Part shown: one piece after another, positions 5,317-62,056 of the stretch | Position numbering within the stretch: the stretch's first letter is position 1 | Layout: the number at the start of each line of letters is the position of its first letter | Assembly (NCBI GenBank): GCA_965235115.1 | Contig: OZ249437.1 | Span: 49,104,001 to 49,168,000 of the forward strand | DNA from: Laetmonice hystrix | Lineage: Eukaryota | Length of the DNA stretch: 64,000 nt | Direction: 5' to 3' | Translations under genes and position numbers: made by a program | The notes under the pieces: model-generated | What the model was told of the DNA's origin: nothing | Database searches by the model: none | What the model saw: the letters and a program-made list of their open reading frames with translations, nothing else

Positions 5317-5523
5317 TGCTGTGAGTGCCTTGCCGAGGGCGTCGCCCGTCTGTGAGCCCCCACCCTGTTGATGGGGTGCGCCGACCATGTCCGAGCCGTT
5401 GATGGTTGGTGAGGTGCTAGGGTAGCCTGAGGAGGAGCTCGGCGGCATCGTACTCCCCCGGAACGTGGACATGGGAGGAAGCCCGGACATCACCTCGTGG
5501 TTGGGTGACATAGTGTGGTAACC
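5317..5523 (-). CDS. TCF4/TCF12/da: E-protein exon (207 nt, phase 0 to 0): GYHTMSPNHEVMSGLPPMSTF...SQTGDALGKALTA, leading into the AD2 region
   Basis: Acceptor gttgtgttgcag|, donor GCA|gtaagt. LPPMSTF and SQTGDALGKAL are hallmark TCF4/TCF12 motifs. Confidence 0.97.
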
Positions 5524-10837: not shown

Positions 10838-10986
10838 CATTGGGTCTCGGGGATGTGGCATGTACGAAGTTGCCTGGGAGTACTGGGAGCCCGAACTATT
10901 ATGTATCATCGCCGAAGGATAACTCGACGTCGGTAAACTGTTGTTCGTAGGCATGGACCACGGGTCGGAGTTGTGGGGCGCACCGT
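10838..10986 (-). CDS. TCF4/TCF12/da: E-protein exon (149 nt, phase 1 to 0): DGAPHNSDPWSMPTNNSLPTSSYPSAMIHNSSGSQYSQATSYMPHPRDPM
   Basis: Acceptor ctttgttttggcag|, donor ATG|gtaagt. Matches TCF4 DGHHSSDPWS...HPHERL. Confidence 0.95.
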
Positions 10987-16265: not shown

Positions 16266-17254
16266 GATGGAATGAGGGTGCCGTCATCTCTCCCCTCCAA
16301 TGACCACACCTTTCAATCCCACCCGACCGTCTGGATCAGACTGACGCTGTCACACCTCTGATTCAGGGCGTTGCCACCAGGAGGCATCACAAGCAATGTA
16401 CTCCCGTCCTGCCGCTTGTGATTGCTGTGTTCAACCGTTTGGGTAACATCTCGAACGCTCAGGTTTGACACACACCAACAATAGCGTCCCAAGGACTGAC
16501 GTGATCGTATTTGGTATCTGCTTTAATGCGTATGAAACATAACACAATAATGCAATGGGATGACAATGGCACAAAAATGGCGTTGATGTACTCGACTCTT
16601 TCTTTCTGTCCTCCCCTTTTCATGGCGGTTGCGGGATGAGGACGACTTCGGGCAGGGCGGGGAGTATTTTCTTTTTACCTGAAGCTTGCGGCGGCTCGAG
16701 TCAATCCACCCCAGATAAAAGATAGGCACAAGTCCTCATTCCGCGGTACCAGTGAGAGGGTGTTGTAGCAGACAATGTAAGAGCGCAGTATTTTCTCTTT
16801 CAATTTTGGCTCACAATGTTGGTGGAACATATATGCCTTTCTGGATGGCTTCAATAGAGGGCAGCTTTTTTATGGAAACCTGTGCCGTACAGCTGAGCAC
16901 ACGCACTCAAGGCACAGACCGTGCTCCCGTTACCTTTACTATGTTACATTGTCCGGTGTTTCCACTAACATACAGCAGTGTACCGAGTCAAACTGCAGTT
17001 TTTTTAACTACTTTTTTTGCTTGCATGCAAAACATGTCTGAAAAACATCTCAACTATGCCAGGGTAGAAAAAAAGTAAGTGAGTAAAAAGATACAGGAAA
17101 AACATCGATTTTCTGGTATACATGTATTGTCGAGATAAATTCATACTTATAAGAAGAGCGGTATTTAAGAATGAGGGGTTTGTTTTATATCTTATGACAA
17201 AAAATGTTTTCTGCATAGACTAGACTTTAAAAGGAATGTCCGAAAGTATCTTAC

Positions 17255-17363
17255 CTGTACGTGTTGGGTAGGGGTATTCACCATACATGTTTGGCCCACC
17301 CGGCTTAGGGGACGGGTACCTGGATGAGTCTCCACTGAACTCATCAGGACTGGCCGAGTACAC
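17255..17363 (-). CDS. TCF4/TCF12/da: E-protein exon (109 nt, phase 0 to 1): [36 protein letters not shown]
   Basis: Acceptor ttttctgtgattgcag|, donor CAG|gtaaga. Matches TCF12 [23 protein letters not shown]. Confidence 0.95.
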
Positions 17364-17989
17364 CTGCAATCACAGAAAACACACCTTGATCAAACCATTC
17401 AGTGATCGTGAAATCTCTACGTTATGATCCCGACACACACCACGCAACAATTCATCCCTAATCGAAGGCGAATCCCTCCTTTACATGCACGTGGTAATCA
17501 ATAACCTCTTTGATGCTTATCACCTACAAATTAAAACATAAGTTGAAGGAAAACGGTTTCGGAGAAGGAAAGCTACGGTTTGGAGGAAGGGATGCTCCAC
17601 AAATTGTACGGAACACCAAAAATAAAACTTCAGTACGTCCTCTAGAATAAAACAGATTCATCGGGTCCAGAAATCTAATGCAGGGCCATAATGTTTTCTA
17701 GTAAAGTACAACACTGTACAGAACTTGAACCTGCTTACAATGACAGGACCGGCCAAGGCTACCCCATTCTGATCCCGCACAACCCGAGTTGACGTTTTGG
17801 TTAGCATGGCCGGCCTCCTCCCATCATCCTTCCAAACTCGGAGACCTTTTTGCCAGTGTTCAACGAGTCGGCACATCAAAGTGATGAAGCTCCCTAAAAT
17901 AGTCTGGATGACTGGTGTGATGAAAGCCAGGCCTCAGCAAGATTCAATTACTGCTGCCTAATAGCCAGATAGGGTTACCCGGACCTAAA

Positions 17990-18250
17990 TGATAGGCCTG
18001 CCAGTCAGCGAGCCGCCCGGCCGGTTCCCCCCGTCCGGCTCCGCGGGGACCCGGCGTGGACCCGGGAGGAGGTCCCGCACGAGCCGTTGTCGGGGGCGGG
18101 CGGGTGGGCGGGCTCCCTGCCGGGCGAGCTCCGTGGGAAGCCGTCGGCCTCTGGGTCGGACCAGCGAACAGTACGACCAACTCCAGCACCCTCGGTTCGC
18201 TAACACCACGTCAGCCTCCTAAAGAAAACCGGCCACTGCCGCCTCCCCTG
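17990..18250. promoter_or_regulatory. GC/CpG-rich island with GC boxes, promoter/enhancer-like
   Basis: Dense CpG, gggggcgggcgggtgggcggg GC-box run and CGTGGGAA at about 18132; about 0.6-0.9 kb upstream of the VYS exon on the minus strand. Confidence 0.4.
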
Positions 18251-21200
18251 TCATCACTCTCCTCCCCCGCCCTGACTCCCCAAAACGTTCCGAACGGTAT
18301 AACGGACAACTCCACAACACAATCACGTTTTGGAGACAACCAAACTCTCATGATAGAACCTCCCATCGCAGCTGCAAATCGGACATCTTCTTTCCATTAA
18401 AACTTTTTTTACTTGGCGGTGTTACAGTAGCAAGTGCGCGTTACGTTTTTGGGACACTCTTCTTCAGCGCTACTTGGTGAGACGTTTGGCCTCCTCCCAC
18501 GATTCTAATCTATATATGTGAAAGGACCAGTTAGACAATATCCTCATGTTTTATATACGATATATACGATATATACGGCAGGTGGCTGGTCGTCATACTA
18601 CTCATTACGTCTTTATTAGCTCTTTATGGTCTCAGGTGACATTGAATTTAATTGGTACAGAAGCAACAATACTTTGTGCACGATTTCTGCCCACATAGAG
18701 TTCGTCATAATGACTCATGGTAATCTGAATGTGACTGATACGGTGGTATCCTTGTATGATTATGTAAAACTTCAGGTAATCAGATCTTCTATAAGCAATG
18801 CGGGTGGACGGCACCACGAACTCATTGCTCTTCCCGACACCAGCTGTGTAAATCTCAGATATGAATGATCCAATTCTTTTACAAATTAACTTCCTGATCT
18901 TCCGCACGAACATTTATGGTCCGGTGCACCGGGAACTGTCCTCTGATGTCTTCCCAGTCCCATACATACACTGTCACTCCTGATGAAAATTTGAAACGGA
19001 TCCTTCAAAACCGTGAGCATATCACGAGCAGGGAGTCTGATAGTGAGATTAACATTGGCCGGCCCCGTGTCTGTAGTCGGAGAGACGTACACAAAGAGAC
19101 GTGGGCCTCATGCACCAAGGATGGTGTTCATTTTCGGCAGACTTATTTTGTGAACGTGTACCTCTCATTGTCAGCGCCCACCTGCCACTGATTCCTGCGA
19201 TGACACGCACAGTTTAGCGAGGTATTCTCTGCCGTGTAGCTCATGAAGCTCATATCGGGAATGTTCCGAGCGAGTGGAGTTATGACGGAGCGTGATATTG
19301 GCTGCTGAGCAGGCCAAGGGGCCGGGTTGCCCGCCACCAGCCGAGCCGAGCAAATCTCAGAGATAGCGCGTAATCACGGCCACATGACGCCAGTCTCAAC
19401 TCCATCATAGCCTTTCAACTCCCCTGTCAGAGATCATATCAGAGAAAACACATACACGGCACCACCAATATACTACTCATCAACATCAATTCATCAGTCC
19501 TCATCGCTCTGTCTCCACTCCAAACTTATCTACAACAGTTAATCATCAAGTTATTTCGTCCGAGTGGAAGCCTGCAGCTACTTAATCGACCTTGAGGATC
19601 GAGCTATTTATAACTACATACTATTTATTTCAGTAATTCGTTGATAATATTTGGAGCATTTAAACAGTTGTTCATAGTTAGAACCAAAGTTAAAAAACTG
19701 GAGAACTAGTCTACTCAAGTGAAATAAGTTTAAACTTGATTGTCGATTTGATGTCTTTTTTCCTTCCAAACATTTCTAAGTCGAAGACGACTGTTGGAAC
19801 CCAAAAATCAGGTTTGCATTAGCCAGGGAAGGGGAATGGTGTTATTGCCCCCTTTGGTAGGGCTTGCCCTTGATAGCCACTCAGTCACCGTAATGGTCCG
19901 TTAGTGTGGGCAATGTGGCCTTGGTACGAGGCCTGGCGCCACCCTCATAACCTTAGGTAAACAAATCGTCAGCTAATTAAATTACTCCATCACACTCTGG
20001 AGATGTGGCCTTTGCCTTGATGTGGTTCCTCTTATCTGTGGATGGGCGGCCTCCTATGGTGATGTGGGTCGTCACCGGGCCGGGGGTAGGCCAAGCCTGG
20101 GCTGGCGGGGTCCACACAGCGCAGATGACCGACCCACAAAGGAGAGCTACAGTCGCCAGGTAAGCTGATACCATGCCTATTGGCATGATAAAGCCACATA
20201 TCCGACCTGGCTCCAGACCTCCAAATGTTATACCTGTGGTTTTTACATCTCTTTGTGTAACCAAGCTCCAGCTTAACAAAAGGATATAGAAAGGAATGGT
20301 TTCGTTTGCACAACATCAATTAACTTTGTCACGAACTATGATTCTTAATGCACCCGACCAAGCGTCTAGGATTGACATTATTATCCTAGGGTCATATCAA
20401 ATATCTGACTTCGCCTTCAATTAATTGTGTGCAACTTTCATTTAAATTGACGTCAATCTATCGCATTTCTCTATTTGAACATTTATTTTTTCACTGACTG
20501 GATGTTTTTTTATATGACCTAGAGTACTTTATTTTAAGTATATGACATGACTGTTAAGGTGGCAAGGTTCGGACAATGACTGTAACCACTCATACAGTTT
20601 TCTCGAATACAGCCTTCCCTTTCAGATTCTGCACAGGTCAGGCAGCTTCTGGTCGTAGAGTGCATGACCTTACACAGCTGATTATAGACCGTGTAATCTT
20701 CACAAGTCTCAGCCCACTCCCTGATCCGGAGGTCGGGGCCCCTGCCAAAGTCCCAAGGACTTTCCTGATTAATTCCAGCCTTACTGATGGGGTCCGTGTT
20801 AGGTTAGACACTTGATGATCCCAACCCACCCGGTCAGGCTACTTTGTAGAGGCTGACATTATTTGCTGGAAGTACCTCCTACCCGAGCCAGGACAAAGGT
20901 TTAATAATTAATAATGGGGCTGTGATGTGGCGAGGGACAAGCCACATGCTATTGACCCAACATTAAGAGGGTTTATGCTGCCAGCCAATCCCTTCACACG
21001 TCTGGCCCTAAGCTGGTAACATCAAAGGATTCTCCTGACCTTGGGGTATCACTGGCCACCAGGGCGGAGACTCCGGCCGTTTACCAAGCCAAGGTCATGG
21101 CCACCTCAGGTAACGGTATACTGTCCTATTGATATTACATGTACAAAATGTACATCAGTGAGTGGATACTTCAACCAGCCACAGACACACACCATATAGC

Positions 21201-22499
21201 AGATTTTATGTCATTTCTTCAGAGTTTTCACTAACCAACTGGAGCCGGGTATTTAAATCCACTGATGGGGAGGATTACGACAGGCTTAGCATTCTTGTTT
21301 AGGACACTGACATGAAAGCATATAACTGGAGCATAACGCTGGCTTTTTCAAATATCTCCAACTATAATTATTGTGGCGTAAATATCTCCGACTATAATTT
21401 TATTACAATTATTGTGGCGTTTATATTTACGACTATGAGGTATTCACTATCAATCTGTCGAGCGGAAAAACCATACACTGCGAGTCTGGCATGTTATTTT
21501 TATATTATCACATGAATATCTTTTTTTTAAACAGTTACACGAAACGTCCTGCTGTAGGATTTATTTCTGGTGGGTAGACATGACACAAGCTGGCCAAGAG
21601 AAACAATCACGTAATCTCAAATTATGACGAATTGCGTTTTCCTTAATCGTTCATCTATAACAATTAAACAACTAAAAGTGACCCCGGTCATCAAATTTGG
21701 TTAATTTACAAAAGGCTCCCATTACAAATACAATAAGATGAATAAATAAATAAATAAATAAATTAAAAGGTATCATTGATTTTTAGTTACTTCTTTTTTC
21801 CTTCCGTATTGAAACTATTCTTTTTACTTTGTGCCAGTGACATGCAATAATTTAAAGAGGATAATGAAACTGTGAAGAAAACAATCAATTCCCTTTGAAA
21901 GCTTGAAAAGTTGGCATGTTATGAGATGATATTGATCAAAGTCATTTCCTGCTATCAAACCTGTCAACATTCAATAGCATGTCATTAACCGGTTTTACAG
22001 CACCGTTACGTGCGACGCTTTCGAGGGCGAAAAATTCTAAGACTGGTGCAAAATCGATCTGTCTGACATTCTTAATCCCCCTCAAACTACGTAAGCTTTC
22101 ATGGGTCTATAGTCCAGCCACAGTTTTTATACTGAGCACGGCGGAAAGATTCCGTTGTTATCTTGTGCATCAAGATAACCTAATTACTAAATTAGATTTC
22201 TTCTGTCACCGTTAGGAACTTAAAATAATCCTGGAAATCCTGCTCCTAACTGCACTTCCCGCAACCATATTAAAAATTAAAGTACTTAGCAATTAAAGTT
22301 CGCTTGGTATTGCTTCCACTAAGTATACCCTTTGGCTGATAACGGATATTTTTTGGGGTATTCTGCATCACACCGCTACGCCGAGCAAATTGTCTGGTCT
22401 TTCTATCCGGACTGGGGGTCAGTCCATTTAAAACAGACTATGTACGGCCAAAACTCGGGGATATTATAACATAAGGGCACGGGATTACGTAAAGGTAAG

Positions 22500-22609
22500 C
22501 AGTGGCGTATCGGGCGGGGATTTGATCATTTCAACGTATGGACCCCCCCCCCCCCGACCAATCTTTTGGAACCCCACAGCCCCAGACCAATCCTGGGTAT
22601 ACGCCACTG
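22500..22609. mobile_element. 110-bp MITE with 11-bp TIRs CAGTGGCGTAT/ATACGCCACTG
   Basis: Perfect TIRs, internal poly-C run, flanked on both sides by GTAAG. Confidence 0.8.
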
Positions 22610-22801
22610 GTAAGAGTTCCTATTATAGCAGGGAGGTGTCCCCTCCACCGATACAGGTGTGAGGGACGCATACATTGTGAACAACTTCTCTCGTTCCCAG
22701 AGACAACACCTTACATGTTAAAGGCACGTAGTGTCGGAGTCAATCAATACACCTTCTGTGAGGGTCGTGCAGAACGTTTTCTAGTATGTAGACGTACTTA
22801 C

Positions 22802-22861
22802 GCTACTCAGTTTGCCTGGCATGTAGACAAATGGACGGTAATACGGGTAGGTACAGAACAT
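22802..22861 (-). CDS. TCF4/TCF12/da: Alternative first coding exon (Alt domain): MFCTYPYYRPFVYMPGKLSS
   Basis: ATG at 22859-22861 with A at -3 and an upstream in-frame TAA; 20 codons; donor AGC|gtaagt in phase 0. Lies in the intron directly before the VYS exon. Resembles the HEBAlt/TCF4-A start MYCAY(P/T)...GK. Confidence 0.8.
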
Positions 22862-22950
22862 CCTGGCCGCTGGTGAGAAGGCAGCTAGGTGATCACAAAC
22901 ACGATGATGATCGGCCGATTATACTAACTCCTCCTGGAGCGGACACTCAC

Positions 22951-23230
22951 AGCCACAGCACAGTTAACATCCACAGCGAGCCGGGAAGGAGCAGTCGTAA
23001 CCAACAGAAACAAACCAAGAGAGAGAAAAAGGCCACAACCAAGGCTGACAAACTTTGTCAAGTTGTGTTAAAGTCTCCGTGTCATGTTGGAGCTCAGCCC
23101 GTGGAGGTGGTGGTAGTGGTGGTGGTGGTGGTGTGGCTGACAGCAAACGTCACTCCGGTAGGTAGAGAGACCAGAGAGCAGTCAGGAAGAGCAGAGTAGT
23201 AGCGCGCTGACAGTAGTCGTATTCGCCATG
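22951..23230 (-). promoter_or_regulatory. Probable non-coding 5' exon and promoter region of the Alt transcript (upper boundary approximate)
   Basis: Donor GCT|gtgagt at 22950. Pyrimidine-rich acceptor ctgccttctcaccag| at 22870 gives an 81-nt intron. Leader-like CT/CAC-rich sequence upstream. TSS not determinable from sequence. Confidence 0.45.
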
Positions 23231-25494
23231 TCCGCATGCCCTGCATCCCTCTCCCCCTCACTCTATAAACTGCTCGGCCAAACTCACACCACCATCAATT
23301 TCCACACTTTGCTGCCCTCCTCACCGGGTGATTCCATTCTCACGGGGAATCCCGTGTTACCCTCTCCTCCTCCTCCCGTCTCTCTCCTATGCCTGCTGGT
23401 CGAGCCCATTCCACTTTCTCCGGGGGTGGGAGGCACAGGCCGGCCACATCCCCAAAAATACACATGCATACGCACACAGACACTTGGAGAAATAAATCAC
23501 TGTGTCAAAAAGAGCATGGGGGCCAGGATGACATTCGCCAGAATCCCTCTTTGTCCCCTGGCCTCCAACCAAGCTGCCCTCTGTTCGCTCCCCTAGACAT
23601 TGTTCTCTACACATTTCAGAGACAGAAAAGCCAGGCACACATTGGCTTTGACTGGCACCCTTCGGACACCACCCCAGTGTATCAATTAGTCCACTTTACA
23701 GTTGAAGGAAAGACTACAGTGTGATGAAAGCCAGTATTTTCTATTTGGGCTCTAATAGGTTCTTTTAAAAAACCTGTTGACATGTGCAACCTGTCGCCTG
23801 GCCGAGCCTAGCACCACCATACAGTGAAGAACTTAGGTGACGACCCACACATTTACAAACTAGCGTCGGGAGGGTGTAAAACACTGCTGAGGTTGTATTT
23901 AACTTGACTAGCAGCGAGATCCGGGGGTTCTGTCCCCGGAGAGGGGGGTTGACCTTATCTAGCGATGTTTTTGGCTTGCTGTGTTGACCAGTGACGAGTG
24001 TACGGCTTGCGGCTGTCAATCCCAACTCCAACCTCGAAACCTTTGGCTGGCTTGTGAACTTTTTTCACTTCCACACCATTTTTTCATCAGGGTAGAAGCT
24101 CAGCATGTTTTCCACTCTTTGCAGTGTAATGTCTTTTTCCTTTGTGCCAGGGTTAGCTTTTTAACAAAGCTGAGCATCATCGTAGGATGTCCAGCATGTA
24201 TTGACATCAATATTGGTGTGTAAGAAGGGGCCGGTTCTGACCCAGAGAATGACTTGGCAAGCACCCGCCCTCCCCCCCCCCCCCCCACACACCCCACACA
24301 CGCACGGAGAGGGCCAGCCCGCCCCCGCCCCTGACATGCCACCTCTCCAGGCAGAACTGTAGGAAAAACCTCCCCTAGCCACGACAGATCGGGCCAATAA
24401 ATGAGGGTGAGCGGCGAATGTGACAGGAACATAGGCGGACAGATGTTGGCTGGACCGACCAAGGCCGACACCGACAACGGCCGCAGTCTTAATGACAGCC
24501 GCATCACTTCATGCACAGCGCCTCGCTCACTGACCCAGCTAACTCTACTAATTGAAAATAGCAAACAAGTACTAATTGAAAATAGCAAACAAGAAACATA
24601 CCGCCCCAAACAGGACTGGAAATCACGCCAGAGCAGTGGAGCATTTCAAGTGATCATGTACCTTATTAGGGGCAGCTAGCATTCCAACGAAACACGGATG
24701 AAAAATGGACAACTGATTTCGGCGACGACCTGACTCAATTTTTGACTGGCCACTTGAATGTGCCAACGGGAACCCTTTGACTGAGTCAAGTGGTGGCTTG
24801 GAAACCCATGGAAGCACAGTTAGCCTGGGAAAGTAGGCGGCATCGCCAGCTTCTTCTGACTGCCTTCACAACATCAAATGGATGAGCAGTTGGAGTTTAC
24901 CTGGCAGAGTACTGACAGAAAACGTCAGCGAAAGCAACATTTCATCTCTAATTGGTCCAAGCTTTTTTCATCTGCCTTCCCTGTAATGTAACTAGACATG
25001 TACATTTGTCTTGATTACACAAAAACCGTGGACGGCTTTTACTGCCGAGGATGGTTTCAAAACAAAGTTACGTTTATTAATGTACTCTTTCCATATGCTG
25101 TTTGCCGTTTTATCCCTCATGTACTTGAATAAAACAAAGCCTAATTTTGACATTGAATTTCAAAGGACCACCGACCTGACATATTGTACGTATCACAACT
25201 GTTGATGTTTTTATTTCTAAATTAGACAACAACCTTACACAGGTGTCTGAGACTATTATATTTCTGACAGCTGGTTGGGGATATGTCTATTGGTGACTCT
25301 CAACTTACGAGTTCTACATCTATAGTTTAATATCTTCTTTTTAATCAATCGATCAGGCATTACTCTTGCCTTATACGCTCTCCCACCTTCTTCGTCTTGA
25401 CCAAGTGACAATTGATGACCAATGATCAGCAGTACAAGCCCTCTAACAGAACACTGACCTAGACCGATACTGTTGACCCTGTGGTGGGAACAGG

Positions 25495-25740
25495 TGTACC
25501 AATTTAGATCTACCCCCCCCCCCCCCCCAATTCAGCGTACCCCCGCTCCCATTCAACATGACCCTCTTCCAGTTTTAAATGACAACACAACCCTAAATAT
25601 CCCTAACCCTAAACCTTAGGTTATGGTTAGTTAGGGTTATTTTGTCATTTGAGACTGGAAGGGGTCATCTAAACCTAGGTTCAGATGATCAGCGTATATT
25701 GAATGGGGGGGGGGGGGGGGTCTACATCACACCTGGTACA
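25495..25740. mobile_element. About 245-bp foldback (palindromic) non-autonomous element
   Basis: Outer arms tgtacc..(C)n..ccattcaa and ttgaatgg(G)n..ggtaca. Inner stem 25559-25597 pairs with 25631-25669. Loop contains ccctaaccctaaacc. Confidence 0.7.
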
Positions 25741-29113: not shown

Positions 29114-29555
29114 NNNNNNNNNNNNNNNNNNNNNNNNNNNNNNNNNNNNNNNNNNNNNNNNNNNNNNNNNNNNNNNNNNNNNNNNNNNNNNNNNNNNNNN
29201 NNNNNNNNNNNNNNNNNNNNNNNNNNNNNNNNNNNNNNNNNNNNNNNNNNNNNNNNNNNNNNNNNNNNNNNNNNNNNNNNNNNNNNNNNNNNNNNNNNNN
29301 NNNNNNNNNNNNNNNNNNNNNNNNNNNNNNNNNNNNNNNNNNNNNNNNNNNNNNNNNNNNNNNNNNNNNNNNNNNNNNNNNNNNNNNNNNNNNNNNNNNN
29401 NNNNNNNNNNNNNNNNNNNNNNNNNNNNNNNNNNNNNNNNNNNNNNNNNNNNNNNNNNNNNNNNNNNNNNNNNNNNNNNNNNNNNNNNNNNNNNNNNNNN
29501 NNNNNNNNNNNNNNNNNNNNNNNNNNNNNNNNNNNNNNNNNNNNNNNNNNNNNNN
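29114..29555. other. Assembly gap (442 N)
   Basis: Run of N. Confidence 1.
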
Positions 29556-44277: not shown

Positions 44278-44330
44278 TGAGCCACTTTTCCTCCGTTTGG
44301 ATTCCTGTGTAAATTTTCCTCCTCGTCCTC
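44278..44330 (-). CDS. TCF4/TCF12/da: E-protein exon (53 nt, phase 1 to 0): (G)GRGGKFTQESKRRKSGS, basic NLS-like
   Basis: Acceptor cattttctttttaacag|, donor TCA|gtgagt. Supplies the phase 1 to 0 link needed between the 46697 and 17363 exons. The KRRK basic patch sits where vertebrates have the KKVRK NLS exon. Confidence 0.85.
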
Positions 44331-46696: not shown

Positions 46697-46811
46697 CTCG
46701 TAAAGATTCGTCCATAGAGCGTTTATTTGGGAAGTAATATGGTGAGCCAGGCTTACCCGCCTGCATGGGGTCTGGTGACATGGACATCCCACTGGGCAGC
46801 ATTGTCGTACC
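46697..46811 (-). CDS. TCF4/TCF12/da: E-protein exon (115 nt, phase 0 to 1): GTTMLPSGMSMSPDPMQAGKPGSPYYFPNKRSMDESLR
   Basis: Acceptor ttgtttgtttcag|, donor G|gtgggt. GKPGSPYY matches TCF12 GKPGTAYY and TCF4 TKPGSQYY. Confidence 0.92.
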
Positions 46812-62003: not shown

Positions 62004-62056
62004 CTGTGGTTCCCTGGAAGAATATCTCTGATTGTAAGGCATTTCATTGTTTTTAT
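62004..62056 (-). CDS. TCF4/TCF12/da: E-protein exon (53 nt, phase 1 to 0): (D)KNNEMPYNQRYSSREPQ
   Basis: Minus-strand acceptor tttttctctttcag| at 62057 and donor CAG|gtacgt at 62003. Open frame fits the next exon. Positionally similar to the vertebrate xKTERGSYSSYGRE exon. Confidence 0.8.

What the first reader, a model, noticed from the sequence alone, without database searches (positions are those of the whole stretch)
22802..22861. Hidden Alt first exon: an invertebrate HEBAlt/TCF4-A-like short E-protein isoform
Seen: on the minus strand, ATG TTC TGT ACC TAC CCG ... GGC AAA CTG AGT AGC|gtaagt gives MFCTYPYYRPFVYMPGKLSS. It has an upstream in-frame stop, a purine at -3 and a consensus phase-0 donor that joins the VYSASP exon in frame. 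It is too short for the ORF track. Established (recalled): vertebrate TCF12 (HEBAlt, MYCAYPVPGMGSNSLMYYYNGKT) and TCF4-A (MYCAYTIPGMGGNSLMYYYNGKA) start from a 23-aa Alt exon in exactly this intron and splice to VYAPS, dropping AD1 and the NLS exon. An Alt form has also been described in sea urchin, so the concept is not new. Inference: this locus has a dual Can/Alt promoter system, and the M-[YF]-C-x-Y-P...GK signature is conserved in a lineage where it may be unannotated.
Basis: partly seen in the sequence, partly recalled or inferred. Interest (0 to 1): 0.85.

Follow-up and report, generated by a model that had tools for sequence, protein, structure and literature searches.

The report
Expressed Alt first exon of E-protein
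A 20-codon exon inside a large intron of this invertebrate's single E-protein (TCF4/TCF12-like bHLH) gene is real, conserved and spliced into RNA, giving a short "Alt" isoform like vertebrate HEBAlt/TCF4-A; it is a sound annotation but a new example of a known arrangement.

Summary
On the minus strand, ATG 22861 to AGC 22802 encodes MFCTYPYYRPFVYMPGKLSS, followed by GTAAGT. It is closed upstream in all three frames. It lies in the 26.9-kb intron between the KRRK (NLS) exon (44330-44278) and the VYSASP exon (17363-17255) of a single-copy E-protein gene.

One public run from the same sample (X4) holds a 293-nt contig reading 22945..22802 | 17363..17255 | 10986.., the predicted junction with GT..AG ends. 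Three DNA runs cover the intron unbroken, and the joined sequence is absent from the assembly. So the contig comes from spliced RNA.

The exon is the only alignable island in about 3 kb against the tubeworm Ridgeia. That match starts at the ATG and ends just after the donor, with 8 synonymous-only and 4 replacement codon differences.

Gene models with the same kind of leader joined to the VY exon exist in Ridgeia, Lamellibrachia, Mytilus and Bulinus.

Not shown: the transcription start (the contig ends at 22945), tissue specificity and function. The concept is published for vertebrates and sea urchin, so this is a new member of a known kind.

The parts
22802..22861 (-). Coding part of the Alt exon: ATG plus 19 codons (MFCTYPYYRPFVYMPGKLSS), ending in phase 0
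   Evidence: Covered by the spliced X4 contig. tblastn to Ridgeia and Lamellibrachia Alt-form models gives 77% identity. blastn island against the Ridgeia locus has E=1e-8.
22862..22945 (-). Transcribed 5' leader of the Alt exon, at least 84 nt. It has no upstream ATG and has stops in all three frames.
   Evidence: The X4 contig reaches 22945.
22796..22801 (-). Splice donor GTAAGT of the Alt exon
   Evidence: The joint has ends CT..AC on the plus strand, which is GT..AG on the minus strand. The same GTAAGT is found in Ridgeia and Lamellibrachia, and GTGAGT in Bulinus.
17364..22801 (-). Intron removed between the Alt exon and the VYS exon (5438 nt)
   Evidence: table 5: skips 5438, 1 contig in X4, depth 13.4. 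The DNA runs X1-X3 cover it without a joint.
17255..17363 (-). First exon shared by Can and Alt forms (VYSASPDEFSGDSSRYPSPKPGGPNMYGEYPYPTRT), 109 nt, ending in phase 1
   Evidence: Covered by the X4 contig.
10838..10986 (-). Next shared exon (D GAPHNSDPWSMPTNN...)
   Evidence: The loose end of the X4 contig maps to 10957-10986, abutting the acceptor. tblastn; boundaries.
5317..5523 (-). Shared exon (GYHTMSPNHEVMSGLPPMSTFRG...QTGDALGKALTA)
44278..44330 (-). Can-only exon with the basic cluster (G GRGGKFTQESKRRKSGS). It ends in phase 0, is the canonical partner of the VYS exon, and is skipped by the Alt form.
   Evidence: Splice-aware scan. tblastn to cephalopod, nemertean and Owenia proteins.
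46697..46811 (-). Can-only exon (TTMLPSGMSMSPDPMQAGKPGSPYYFPNKRSMDESLR)
62004..62056 (-). Probable Can-only exon (DKNNEMPYNQRYSSREPQ)
   Evidence: Weak tblastn matches with good AG/GT boundaries. Further Can exons lie beyond the window at about 68.3, 69.7 and 117.2 kb in window numbering.

Best explanation
The locus is the animal's single E-protein (class I bHLH; TCF3/4/12, daughterless family) gene, on the minus strand and more than 140 kb long. Within the 26.9-kb intron between the NLS exon and the VYSASP exon, transcription starts at or a little upstream of 22945 (inferred). The resulting exon has an 84-nt or longer leader without ATG, followed by ATG 22861 and 19 further codons. Its GTAAGT donor is spliced to the acceptor at 17363 (shown). 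The mRNA then continues through the shared exons, with the junction 17255|10986 also shown. The product is a short 'Alt' E-protein. It starts with a Tyr/Pro-rich 20-residue leader and lacks AD1 and the NKR...KRRK basic region. It keeps AD2 (LDDAIHVLR) and the bHLH. By analogy with HEBAlt and TCF4-A (inferred, not tested), it would have altered activation strength. It would depend on NLS-bearing bHLH partners for nuclear import. It would be expressed from a separately regulated promoter in a restricted set of cells.
For: The gene is an E-protein: AD2 and bHLH exons lie downstream of the window, and there is tblastn collinearity with mollusc, annelid and vertebrate E-proteins. The AD2 exon is single copy. 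Position: the Alt exon lies between the NLS exon 44330-44278 and the VYS exon 17363. RNA: X4 has one 293-nt contig, depth 13.4, joining 22945-22802 to 17363-17255 with GT..AG ends and then running into 10986. X4 covers only exonic bins, while X1-X3 cover the intron unbroken. The joined 30-mer is absent from the assembly and the exon is single copy, which excludes a retrocopy. Start codon: ATG 22861 is the first ATG of the contig, and all three upstream frames are closed. Selection: against the Ridgeia locus the only significant alignment in about 3 kb runs from the ATG to just past the donor (22861-22789, E=1e-8). It has 8 synonymous-only, 4 replacement and 8 identical codons (sequences). Orthologous leaders are joined to the VY exon in gene models of Ridgeia, Lamellibrachia, Mytilus galloprovincialis and Bulinus. 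Their genomic ATG-to-GT[AG]AGT exons are shown for three of these species. Alignment consensus: MFCTYPxYxPxVYxPGKxS. Vertebrate Alt leaders retrieved here share M-Y-C-A-Y-P and the |VYAPS junction. Functional analogies: PMC3346973 (Alt exon with its own start site, 23 aa), PMC9385190 (Tyr motif controls HEBAlt activity), PMC3137626 (TCF4-A lacks the NLS and enters the nucleus via partners).
Against: X4's library type is not on record, so calling it RNA is inferred from its exon-only, intron-less contig. Only one contig from one sample supports the junction. Its 5' end at 22945 directly follows an AG (22947-22946), so an upstream leader exon cannot be excluded. No cap or 5' data were available, and there is no CpG or core-promoter signature. 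Similarity to the vertebrate Alt peptide is confined to about 6 residues. No expression pattern and no protein evidence were available.
Confidence: 0.8

Rival explanations
1. The exon is real and spliced but is not a first exon. It would be an internal exon fed from an upstream non-coding leader or from the canonical promoter. Inclusion in Can transcripts would close the frame (a poison exon), or translation would re-start at ATG 22861.
For: The X4 contig stops at 22945 immediately after an AG, and X4 has no coverage at 22946-23239. A graph branch at a splice junction would end a contig there. All three frames upstream of the ATG are closed, as expected for a frame-closing insert.
Against: The sequence before that AG is only about 50% pyrimidine, whereas the real acceptors of this gene are strongly T-rich. 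An AG at a given spot has about a 1 in 16 chance. Conservation begins exactly at the ATG and shows a synonymous-rich pattern, so the peptide is under selection, which a mere poison exon does not need. Gene models in four other species start at this exon. The vertebrate homologue has its own start site (PMC3346973).
Confidence: 0.15
2. The exon is a lophotrochozoan alternative first exon that arose independently of the vertebrate and sea-urchin Alt exon. The shared M-[YF]-C-x-Y-P start and position would then be convergence. This rivals only the homology claim, not the structure.
For: Only Y5, P6 and one further P are invariant across the seven leaders. The vertebrate tail ...SLMYYYNGK has no counterpart. 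Mytilus and Bulinus lack the Cys. Other lophotrochozoan models use quite different short leaders before the same VY exon (Tubulanus MDYAELKPLQ and MILPW, Sinanodonta MFYLPRPLRPVAQ). This intron therefore readily hosts alternative starts.
Against: The intron, the phase-0 donor, the acceptor exon, the size (20-28 vs 23 aa), the Tyr/Pro-rich make-up and the first residues are all shared. A paper citing the sea-urchin study says that non-gnathostome E-protein loci resemble HEB/E2-2 loci in structure (PMC6433000, citing Schrankel et al. 2016, Dev Biol 416:149).
Confidence: 0.2
3. Chance open frame plus an artefactual contig (chimera, contaminant or retrocopy).
For: Five other ATG..(15-40 codons)..GTRAGT phase-0 frames occur on this strand of the window by chance. 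Only one contig supports the junction.
Against: The contig removes two consecutive introns at exact GT..AG borders and carries the sample's own allele at 22850. There is no joined copy in the genome. The peptide and donor are conserved across two phyla. 0 of 200 simulations reproduce the motif plus donor.
Confidence: 0.02

Closest known systems
HEBAlt (TCF12 Alt form) and E2-2Alt / TCF4-A / ITF-2A of vertebrates
   Same: Both are short ATG-initiated exons in the intron immediately before the VY[AS]PS exon. Both have a phase-0 donor, begin M-[YF]-C-x-Y-P and are Tyr-rich. The product lacks AD1 and the NLS region but keeps AD2 and the bHLH (PMC3346973, PMC3137626, PMC9385190).
   Different: This leader is 20 residues rather than 23. 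The vertebrate ...NSLMYYYNGK[TA] half is replaced by ...YYRPFVYMPGKLSS. There is one gene here rather than two paralogues. The start site, expression domain and activity are untested here.
Sea urchin SpE-protein Alt form (Schrankel et al. 2016, Dev Biol 416:149; paper not held, known here from its title and from PMC6433000)
   Same: An invertebrate with a single E-protein gene that gives both Can and Alt forms.
   Different: The sea urchin is a deuterostome and this genome is a lophotrochozoan. I could not obtain the sea-urchin leader sequence to compare, nor check which other phyla that paper surveyed.
Alt-type gene models of other lophotrochozoans: Ridgeia piscesae NP493_182g03041, Lamellibrachia satsuma 'Transcription factor 12', Mytilus galloprovincialis VDH91719.1, Bulinus truncatus 'Transcription factor 12'
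   Same: The leader is clearly orthologous (80, 80, 50 and 60% identity). The junction to the VY exon is the same, as is the exon anatomy in the three species whose genomic exon was read (Ridgeia, Lamellibrachia, Bulinus). In Mytilus a Can model (VDH91718.1, with AD1) and the Alt model lie on the same contig.
   Different: Those are unnamed automatic models, and the two siboglinid ones start at a non-conserved ATG 10 codons further upstream. This genome has no such model in the protein collection, but here the junction is seen in RNA.

Membership tests
E-protein (class I bHLH: TCF3/TCF4/TCF12, daughterless) | AD2 / loop-helix motif (LDDAIHVLR) and an E-type bHLH (RRxANNxRER...RVRDINEAFKELG...QTKL...LEQQVR) in one gene | tested here: met
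   Both lie on the minus strand downstream of the window and are collinear with mollusc, annelid and vertebrate E-proteins. Homologues carry Pfam HLH.
E-protein (class I bHLH: TCF3/TCF4/TCF12, daughterless) | AD1 helix (LxDLLDF) at the canonical N-terminus | tested here: inconclusive
   Only the second half (QMFSPPVPG) was found, at about 117.2 kb in window numbering. The DLLDF exon was not found in the 60 kb fetched upstream.
Alt isoform of E-proteins (HEBAlt / E2-2Alt type) | Unique exon in the intron between the NLS-region exon and the VY[AS]PS exon | tested here: met
   NLS exon 44330-44278, Alt exon 22861-22802, VYS exon 17363-17255.
Alt isoform of E-proteins (HEBAlt / E2-2Alt type) | Exon supplies the start codon and about 20-23 residues, and joins the VY exon in frame in mRNA | tested here: met
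   It holds the first ATG of the contig and all upstream frames are closed. The spliced contig in X4 shows the junction.
Alt isoform of E-proteins (HEBAlt / E2-2Alt type) | Own transcription start just upstream of the exon, independent of the canonical promoter | tested here: inconclusive
   The contig ends at 22945 with no upstream coverage in X4. No 5'-end data were available and there is no CpG signal.
Alt isoform of E-proteins (HEBAlt / E2-2Alt type) | Alt-domain sequence similarity | tested here: inconclusive
   M-[YF]-C-x-Y-P and the Tyr richness are shared with Sorex TCF12 X7, Catarrhini TCF4 and hagfish TCF4. The rest of the vertebrate domain, including the YYY motif in its vertebrate position, is not aligned.
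Alt isoform of E-proteins (HEBAlt / E2-2Alt type) | Restricted expression and distinct transcriptional activity relative to the Can form | not testable with these tools
   No RNA runs labelled by tissue were available for this organism.

The most novel reading that the evidence does not exclude
The Can/Alt dual-start architecture, with a Tyr/Pro-rich M-[FY]-[CY]-x-Y-P leader spliced in phase 0 to the VY exon, would date to the protostome-deuterostome ancestor. The leader would then be an ancient regulatory module (for example tyrosine phosphorylation, as for the HEBAlt YYY motif) rather than a deuterostome or vertebrate innovation. In this lineage it would combine with clusters of alternative AD2 exons (two) and HLH exons (four) to give a large isoform repertoire from a single gene.
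Probability: 0.55. Interest if true: 0.45.

Novelty: new member of a known kind. Interest (0 to 1): 0.33.

Why it matters
This adds an RNA-supported, cross-phylum-conserved isoform that automatic annotation of this genome would probably miss, because the exon has only 60 coding bases. It extends evidence for the Can/Alt switch of E-proteins to Lophotrochozoa (annelids and molluscs). That bears on how old this regulatory device of haematopoietic and neural bHLH networks is. It also gives a consensus (MFCTYPxYxPxVYxPGK) for finding the exon in other genomes. It does not change the concept, which is established in vertebrates and sea urchin.

Tried and rejected
- Two searches for sequencing runs found no run on record as RNA. 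Only run X4, of unknown type, proved informative once its contigs were laid on the window.
- Schrankel et al. 2016 is not held. Full-text searches for its content, for the peptide string and for lophotrochozoan Alt forms gave only reference-list mentions. The phyla that paper covered therefore remain unchecked.
- The search with the first 60 residues of the Ridgeia protein found only the two siboglinids.
- The N-terminal profile search among short proteins returned only vertebrate Alt fragments. No echinoderm, hemichordate or amphioxus leader was obtained to bridge the two consensus forms.
- The Mytilus Alt model could not be located on a contig.
- No full-length protein closer than about 70% identity to this genome's gene exists in the collection. 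The species could not be placed more finely than lophotrochozoan, with the leader closest to annelids.
- The CpG observed/expected profile shows no promoter-like peak at the exon.
- No conserved non-coding block was found upstream of the exon against Ridgeia.
- Pfam has no model for the Alt leader.
- Earlier scan notes hold nothing on this locus.

Full report
**Observation**

The minus strand from 22861 to 22802 reads ATG followed by 19 codons, MFCTYPYYRPFVYMPGKLSS, and is followed directly by GTAAGT.
- An in-frame TAA lies 20 codons upstream, and A is at -3.
- The next exon begins after ...ttgcag at 17363 (VYSASPDEF...) and ends at 17255.
- The donor is phase 0, so the join is in frame.

M[YF]C.Y occurs once in all six frames of the window. 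About 0.17 are expected per simulated window, and none of 200 simulations gave the motif followed by an open frame and a consensus phase-0 donor. The motif was chosen after the fact, so this is only a first filter.

**Host gene**

The window is G000:C2:49104001-49168000 of a 627-Mb assembly. I fetched 40 kb downstream and 60 kb upstream and ran tblastn with E-proteins recovered by an exhaustive profile search. This shows one long minus-strand E-protein gene.

Can-only exons:
- about 117.2, 69.7 and 68.3 kb in window numbering, outside the window
- 62056-62004
- 46811-46697
- 44330-44278 (GRGGKFTQESKRRKSGS, the basic or NLS exon)

Then come the candidate exon and the shared exons:
- 17363-17255, 10986-10838 and 5523-5317
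- further exons below position 1, including AD2 (LDDAIHVLR), the basic region and the HLH exons

The AD2 exon is single copy in the genome. The candidate exon therefore lies in the 26.9-kb intron between the NLS exon and the VY exon. That is the position of the Alt exon of TCF12 and TCF4 (PMC3346973).

**RNA evidence**

No run is on record as RNA. Four runs of one sample hold the sequence, and I laid them on 17240-23239.
- X1-X3 cover the whole stretch, introns included, without a joint.
- X4 is a small run (59 million letters) and contributes a single 293-nt contig at depth 13.4.
- That contig covers 22945-22800, skips 5438 bases with ends CT..AC on the plus strand (GT..AG on the minus strand), and resumes at 17361-17255. 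The cut can shift by 2, which gives exactly 22802|17363.
- It then carries 40 further letters. These map to 10957-10986, ending at the acceptor of the next exon.
- The contig also carries the sample's own allele at 22850, a synonymous ACC to ACT change.

The joined 30-mer is absent from the assembly and the exon is single copy, so a retrocopy is excluded. Two consecutive introns are removed at exact borders, and X4 covers exons only. This is what spliced RNA looks like.

**Start codon and 5' end**

Within the contig, ATG 22861 is the first ATG, and all three frames of the 84-nt leader contain stops. No reading frame can enter from upstream, so the protein must start at MFCTYP.

The contig ends at 22945, and X4 has no coverage at 22946-23239.
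- An AG sits at 22947-22946, so an upstream leader exon cannot be excluded.
- The preceding tract is only about half pyrimidine, unlike the T-rich acceptors elsewhere in this gene.
- There is no CpG or conserved non-coding signal.
- 'Own promoter' therefore remains an inference from the vertebrate precedent.

**Conservation**

The profile search returned a Ridgeia piscesae model (P0008) beginning MDTLDARKQA-MFCTTYPYYRHLVYMPGKLGA|VYSPNPEEF, and a near-identical Lamellibrachia satsuma model. Further Alt-type N-termini are shown below.

| Species | Leader and junction |
|---|---|
| Mytilus galloprovincialis VDH91719.1 | MFYSYPVYPPIGMYLPTKVSG\|VYPPAP |
| Bulinus truncatus | MFTSSYTYPMYPPPFVYLAPGSQSKGNY\|VYSPGP |
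| Mizuhopecten | an Alt-like stretch with an upstream extension |

In Mytilus, a Can model with AD1 lies on the same contig as the Alt model.

Genomic loci show the same anatomy: an ATG-started micro-exon with a phase-0 GTAAGT donor in Ridgeia and Lamellibrachia, and GTGAGT in Bulinus. In Ridgeia a 3.4-kb intron leads to the VY exon.

Against Ridgeia, the only significant DNA alignment in about 3 kb runs from the ATG to just beyond the donor (22861-22789, E=1e-8).
- It starts at the MFC codon, not at the siboglinid upstream ATG.
- It has 8 synonymous-only, 4 replacement and 8 identical codons, plus one codon indel (sequences). This is the signature of selection on the peptide.

The seven-leader alignment gives the consensus MFCTYPxYxPxVYxPGKxS.

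**Comparison with vertebrates**

| Protein | Leader and junction |
|---|---|
| Sorex TCF12 X7 | MYCAYPVPGAGSNSLMYYYNGKT\|VYAPSP |
| Catarrhini TCF4 | MYCAYTIPGMGGNSLMYYYNGKA\|VYAPSA |
| Hagfish TCF4 | MYCAYPVPGMGANSLMYYYNGKT\|VYAPP |

Shared with the present exon are the intron, the phase, the acceptor exon, the size class, the Tyr/Pro richness and the first six residues. The second half is not alignable. Homology is likely but not proven. No echinoderm, hemichordate or cephalochordate leader could be retrieved to bridge the gap.

**Mechanism**

Shown:
- The exon exists, is transcribed, and is spliced to the shared exons.
- It supplies the only possible start codon.
- Its peptide is conserved.

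Inferred from the structure:
- The product lacks AD1 and the NKR...KRRK basic region.
- It keeps AD2 and the bHLH.

Inferred from vertebrate work:
- A separate promoter (PMC3346973).
- Activity modulated through the leader's tyrosines (PMC9385190).
- Nuclear entry by piggy-back on NLS-bearing partners (PMC3137626).

**Novelty**

The Alt/Can arrangement is textbook for TCF12 and TCF4. It is published for the sea urchin (Schrankel et al. 2016). A citing paper states that non-gnathostome E-protein loci resemble HEB/E2-2 loci (PMC6433000). Alt-type models already sit unremarked in the annotations of several lophotrochozoans.

What is new here:
- RNA support in this species.
- The explicit lophotrochozoan consensus.
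- The demonstration of purifying selection on the micro-exon.

I rate it a new member of a known kind, of moderate to low interest. I could not read the 2016 paper, so the protostome extension may already be in print.

**Organism**

No full-length protein closer than about 70% identity exists in the collection. The leader is closest to siboglinid annelids (80%). The best overall matches are molluscs, annelids and nemerteans. This genome is therefore a lophotrochozoan, possibly an annelid. No model of its own E-protein was seen in the protein collection.

Noticed in passing
L003:410-1530 (window numbering -19590 to -18470; G000:C2 about 49084410-49085530), minus strand: Four tandem helix1-loop-helix2 exons, each with an AG acceptor and a G|GTA donor in the same phases. 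One is of the 'QPMTKLMVLQQAVNVI' type and three are close copies of the 'DKPQTKLSILQEAVSII' type. They look like a four-way mutually exclusive cluster, comparable to E12/E47 of TCF3. The Lamellibrachia model strings two such exons in series, so the duplication is shared with siboglinids.
   Followed up: partly
L002:5776-5850 and L002:1735-1959 (window numbering -4224 to -4150 and -8265 to -8041), minus strand: Two AD2-type exons (QAQMEERLDDAMLVLRGEAE, 20 codons; QTRMEERLDDAIHVLRNHAE..., 75 codons), both phase 0 to 0. Ridgeia has the same pair (L012:24085-24138 and 25586-25639). They are probably alternative exons.
   Followed up: partly
window 23096-23142: A CAC/CACCAC-type simple repeat 150-200 nt upstream of the end of the RNA contig. 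DNA contigs of all runs break there.
   Followed up: no
P0095 (Haliotis cracherodii TCF12-like isoform X9), residues 1-20: A second Tyr-rich leader (MYSYPGFYASRYYMHHP...) is spliced further upstream, before the NLS-region exons. P0102, P0105 and P0027 show other alternative leaders (MSCMY...) joined to the MFSPPV half of AD1. Lophotrochozoan E-protein genes therefore have several alternative starts.
   Followed up: no
window 29114-29555: An assembly gap or masked run of 442 N inside the NLS-exon to VY-exon intron. It was left untouched.
   Followed up: no
window 22850: A heterozygous G/A (plus strand) in the sample, seen in DNA runs X2 and X3 and in the RNA-type contig of X4. It is synonymous (ACC/ACT, Thr4 of the leader).
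   Followed up: yes
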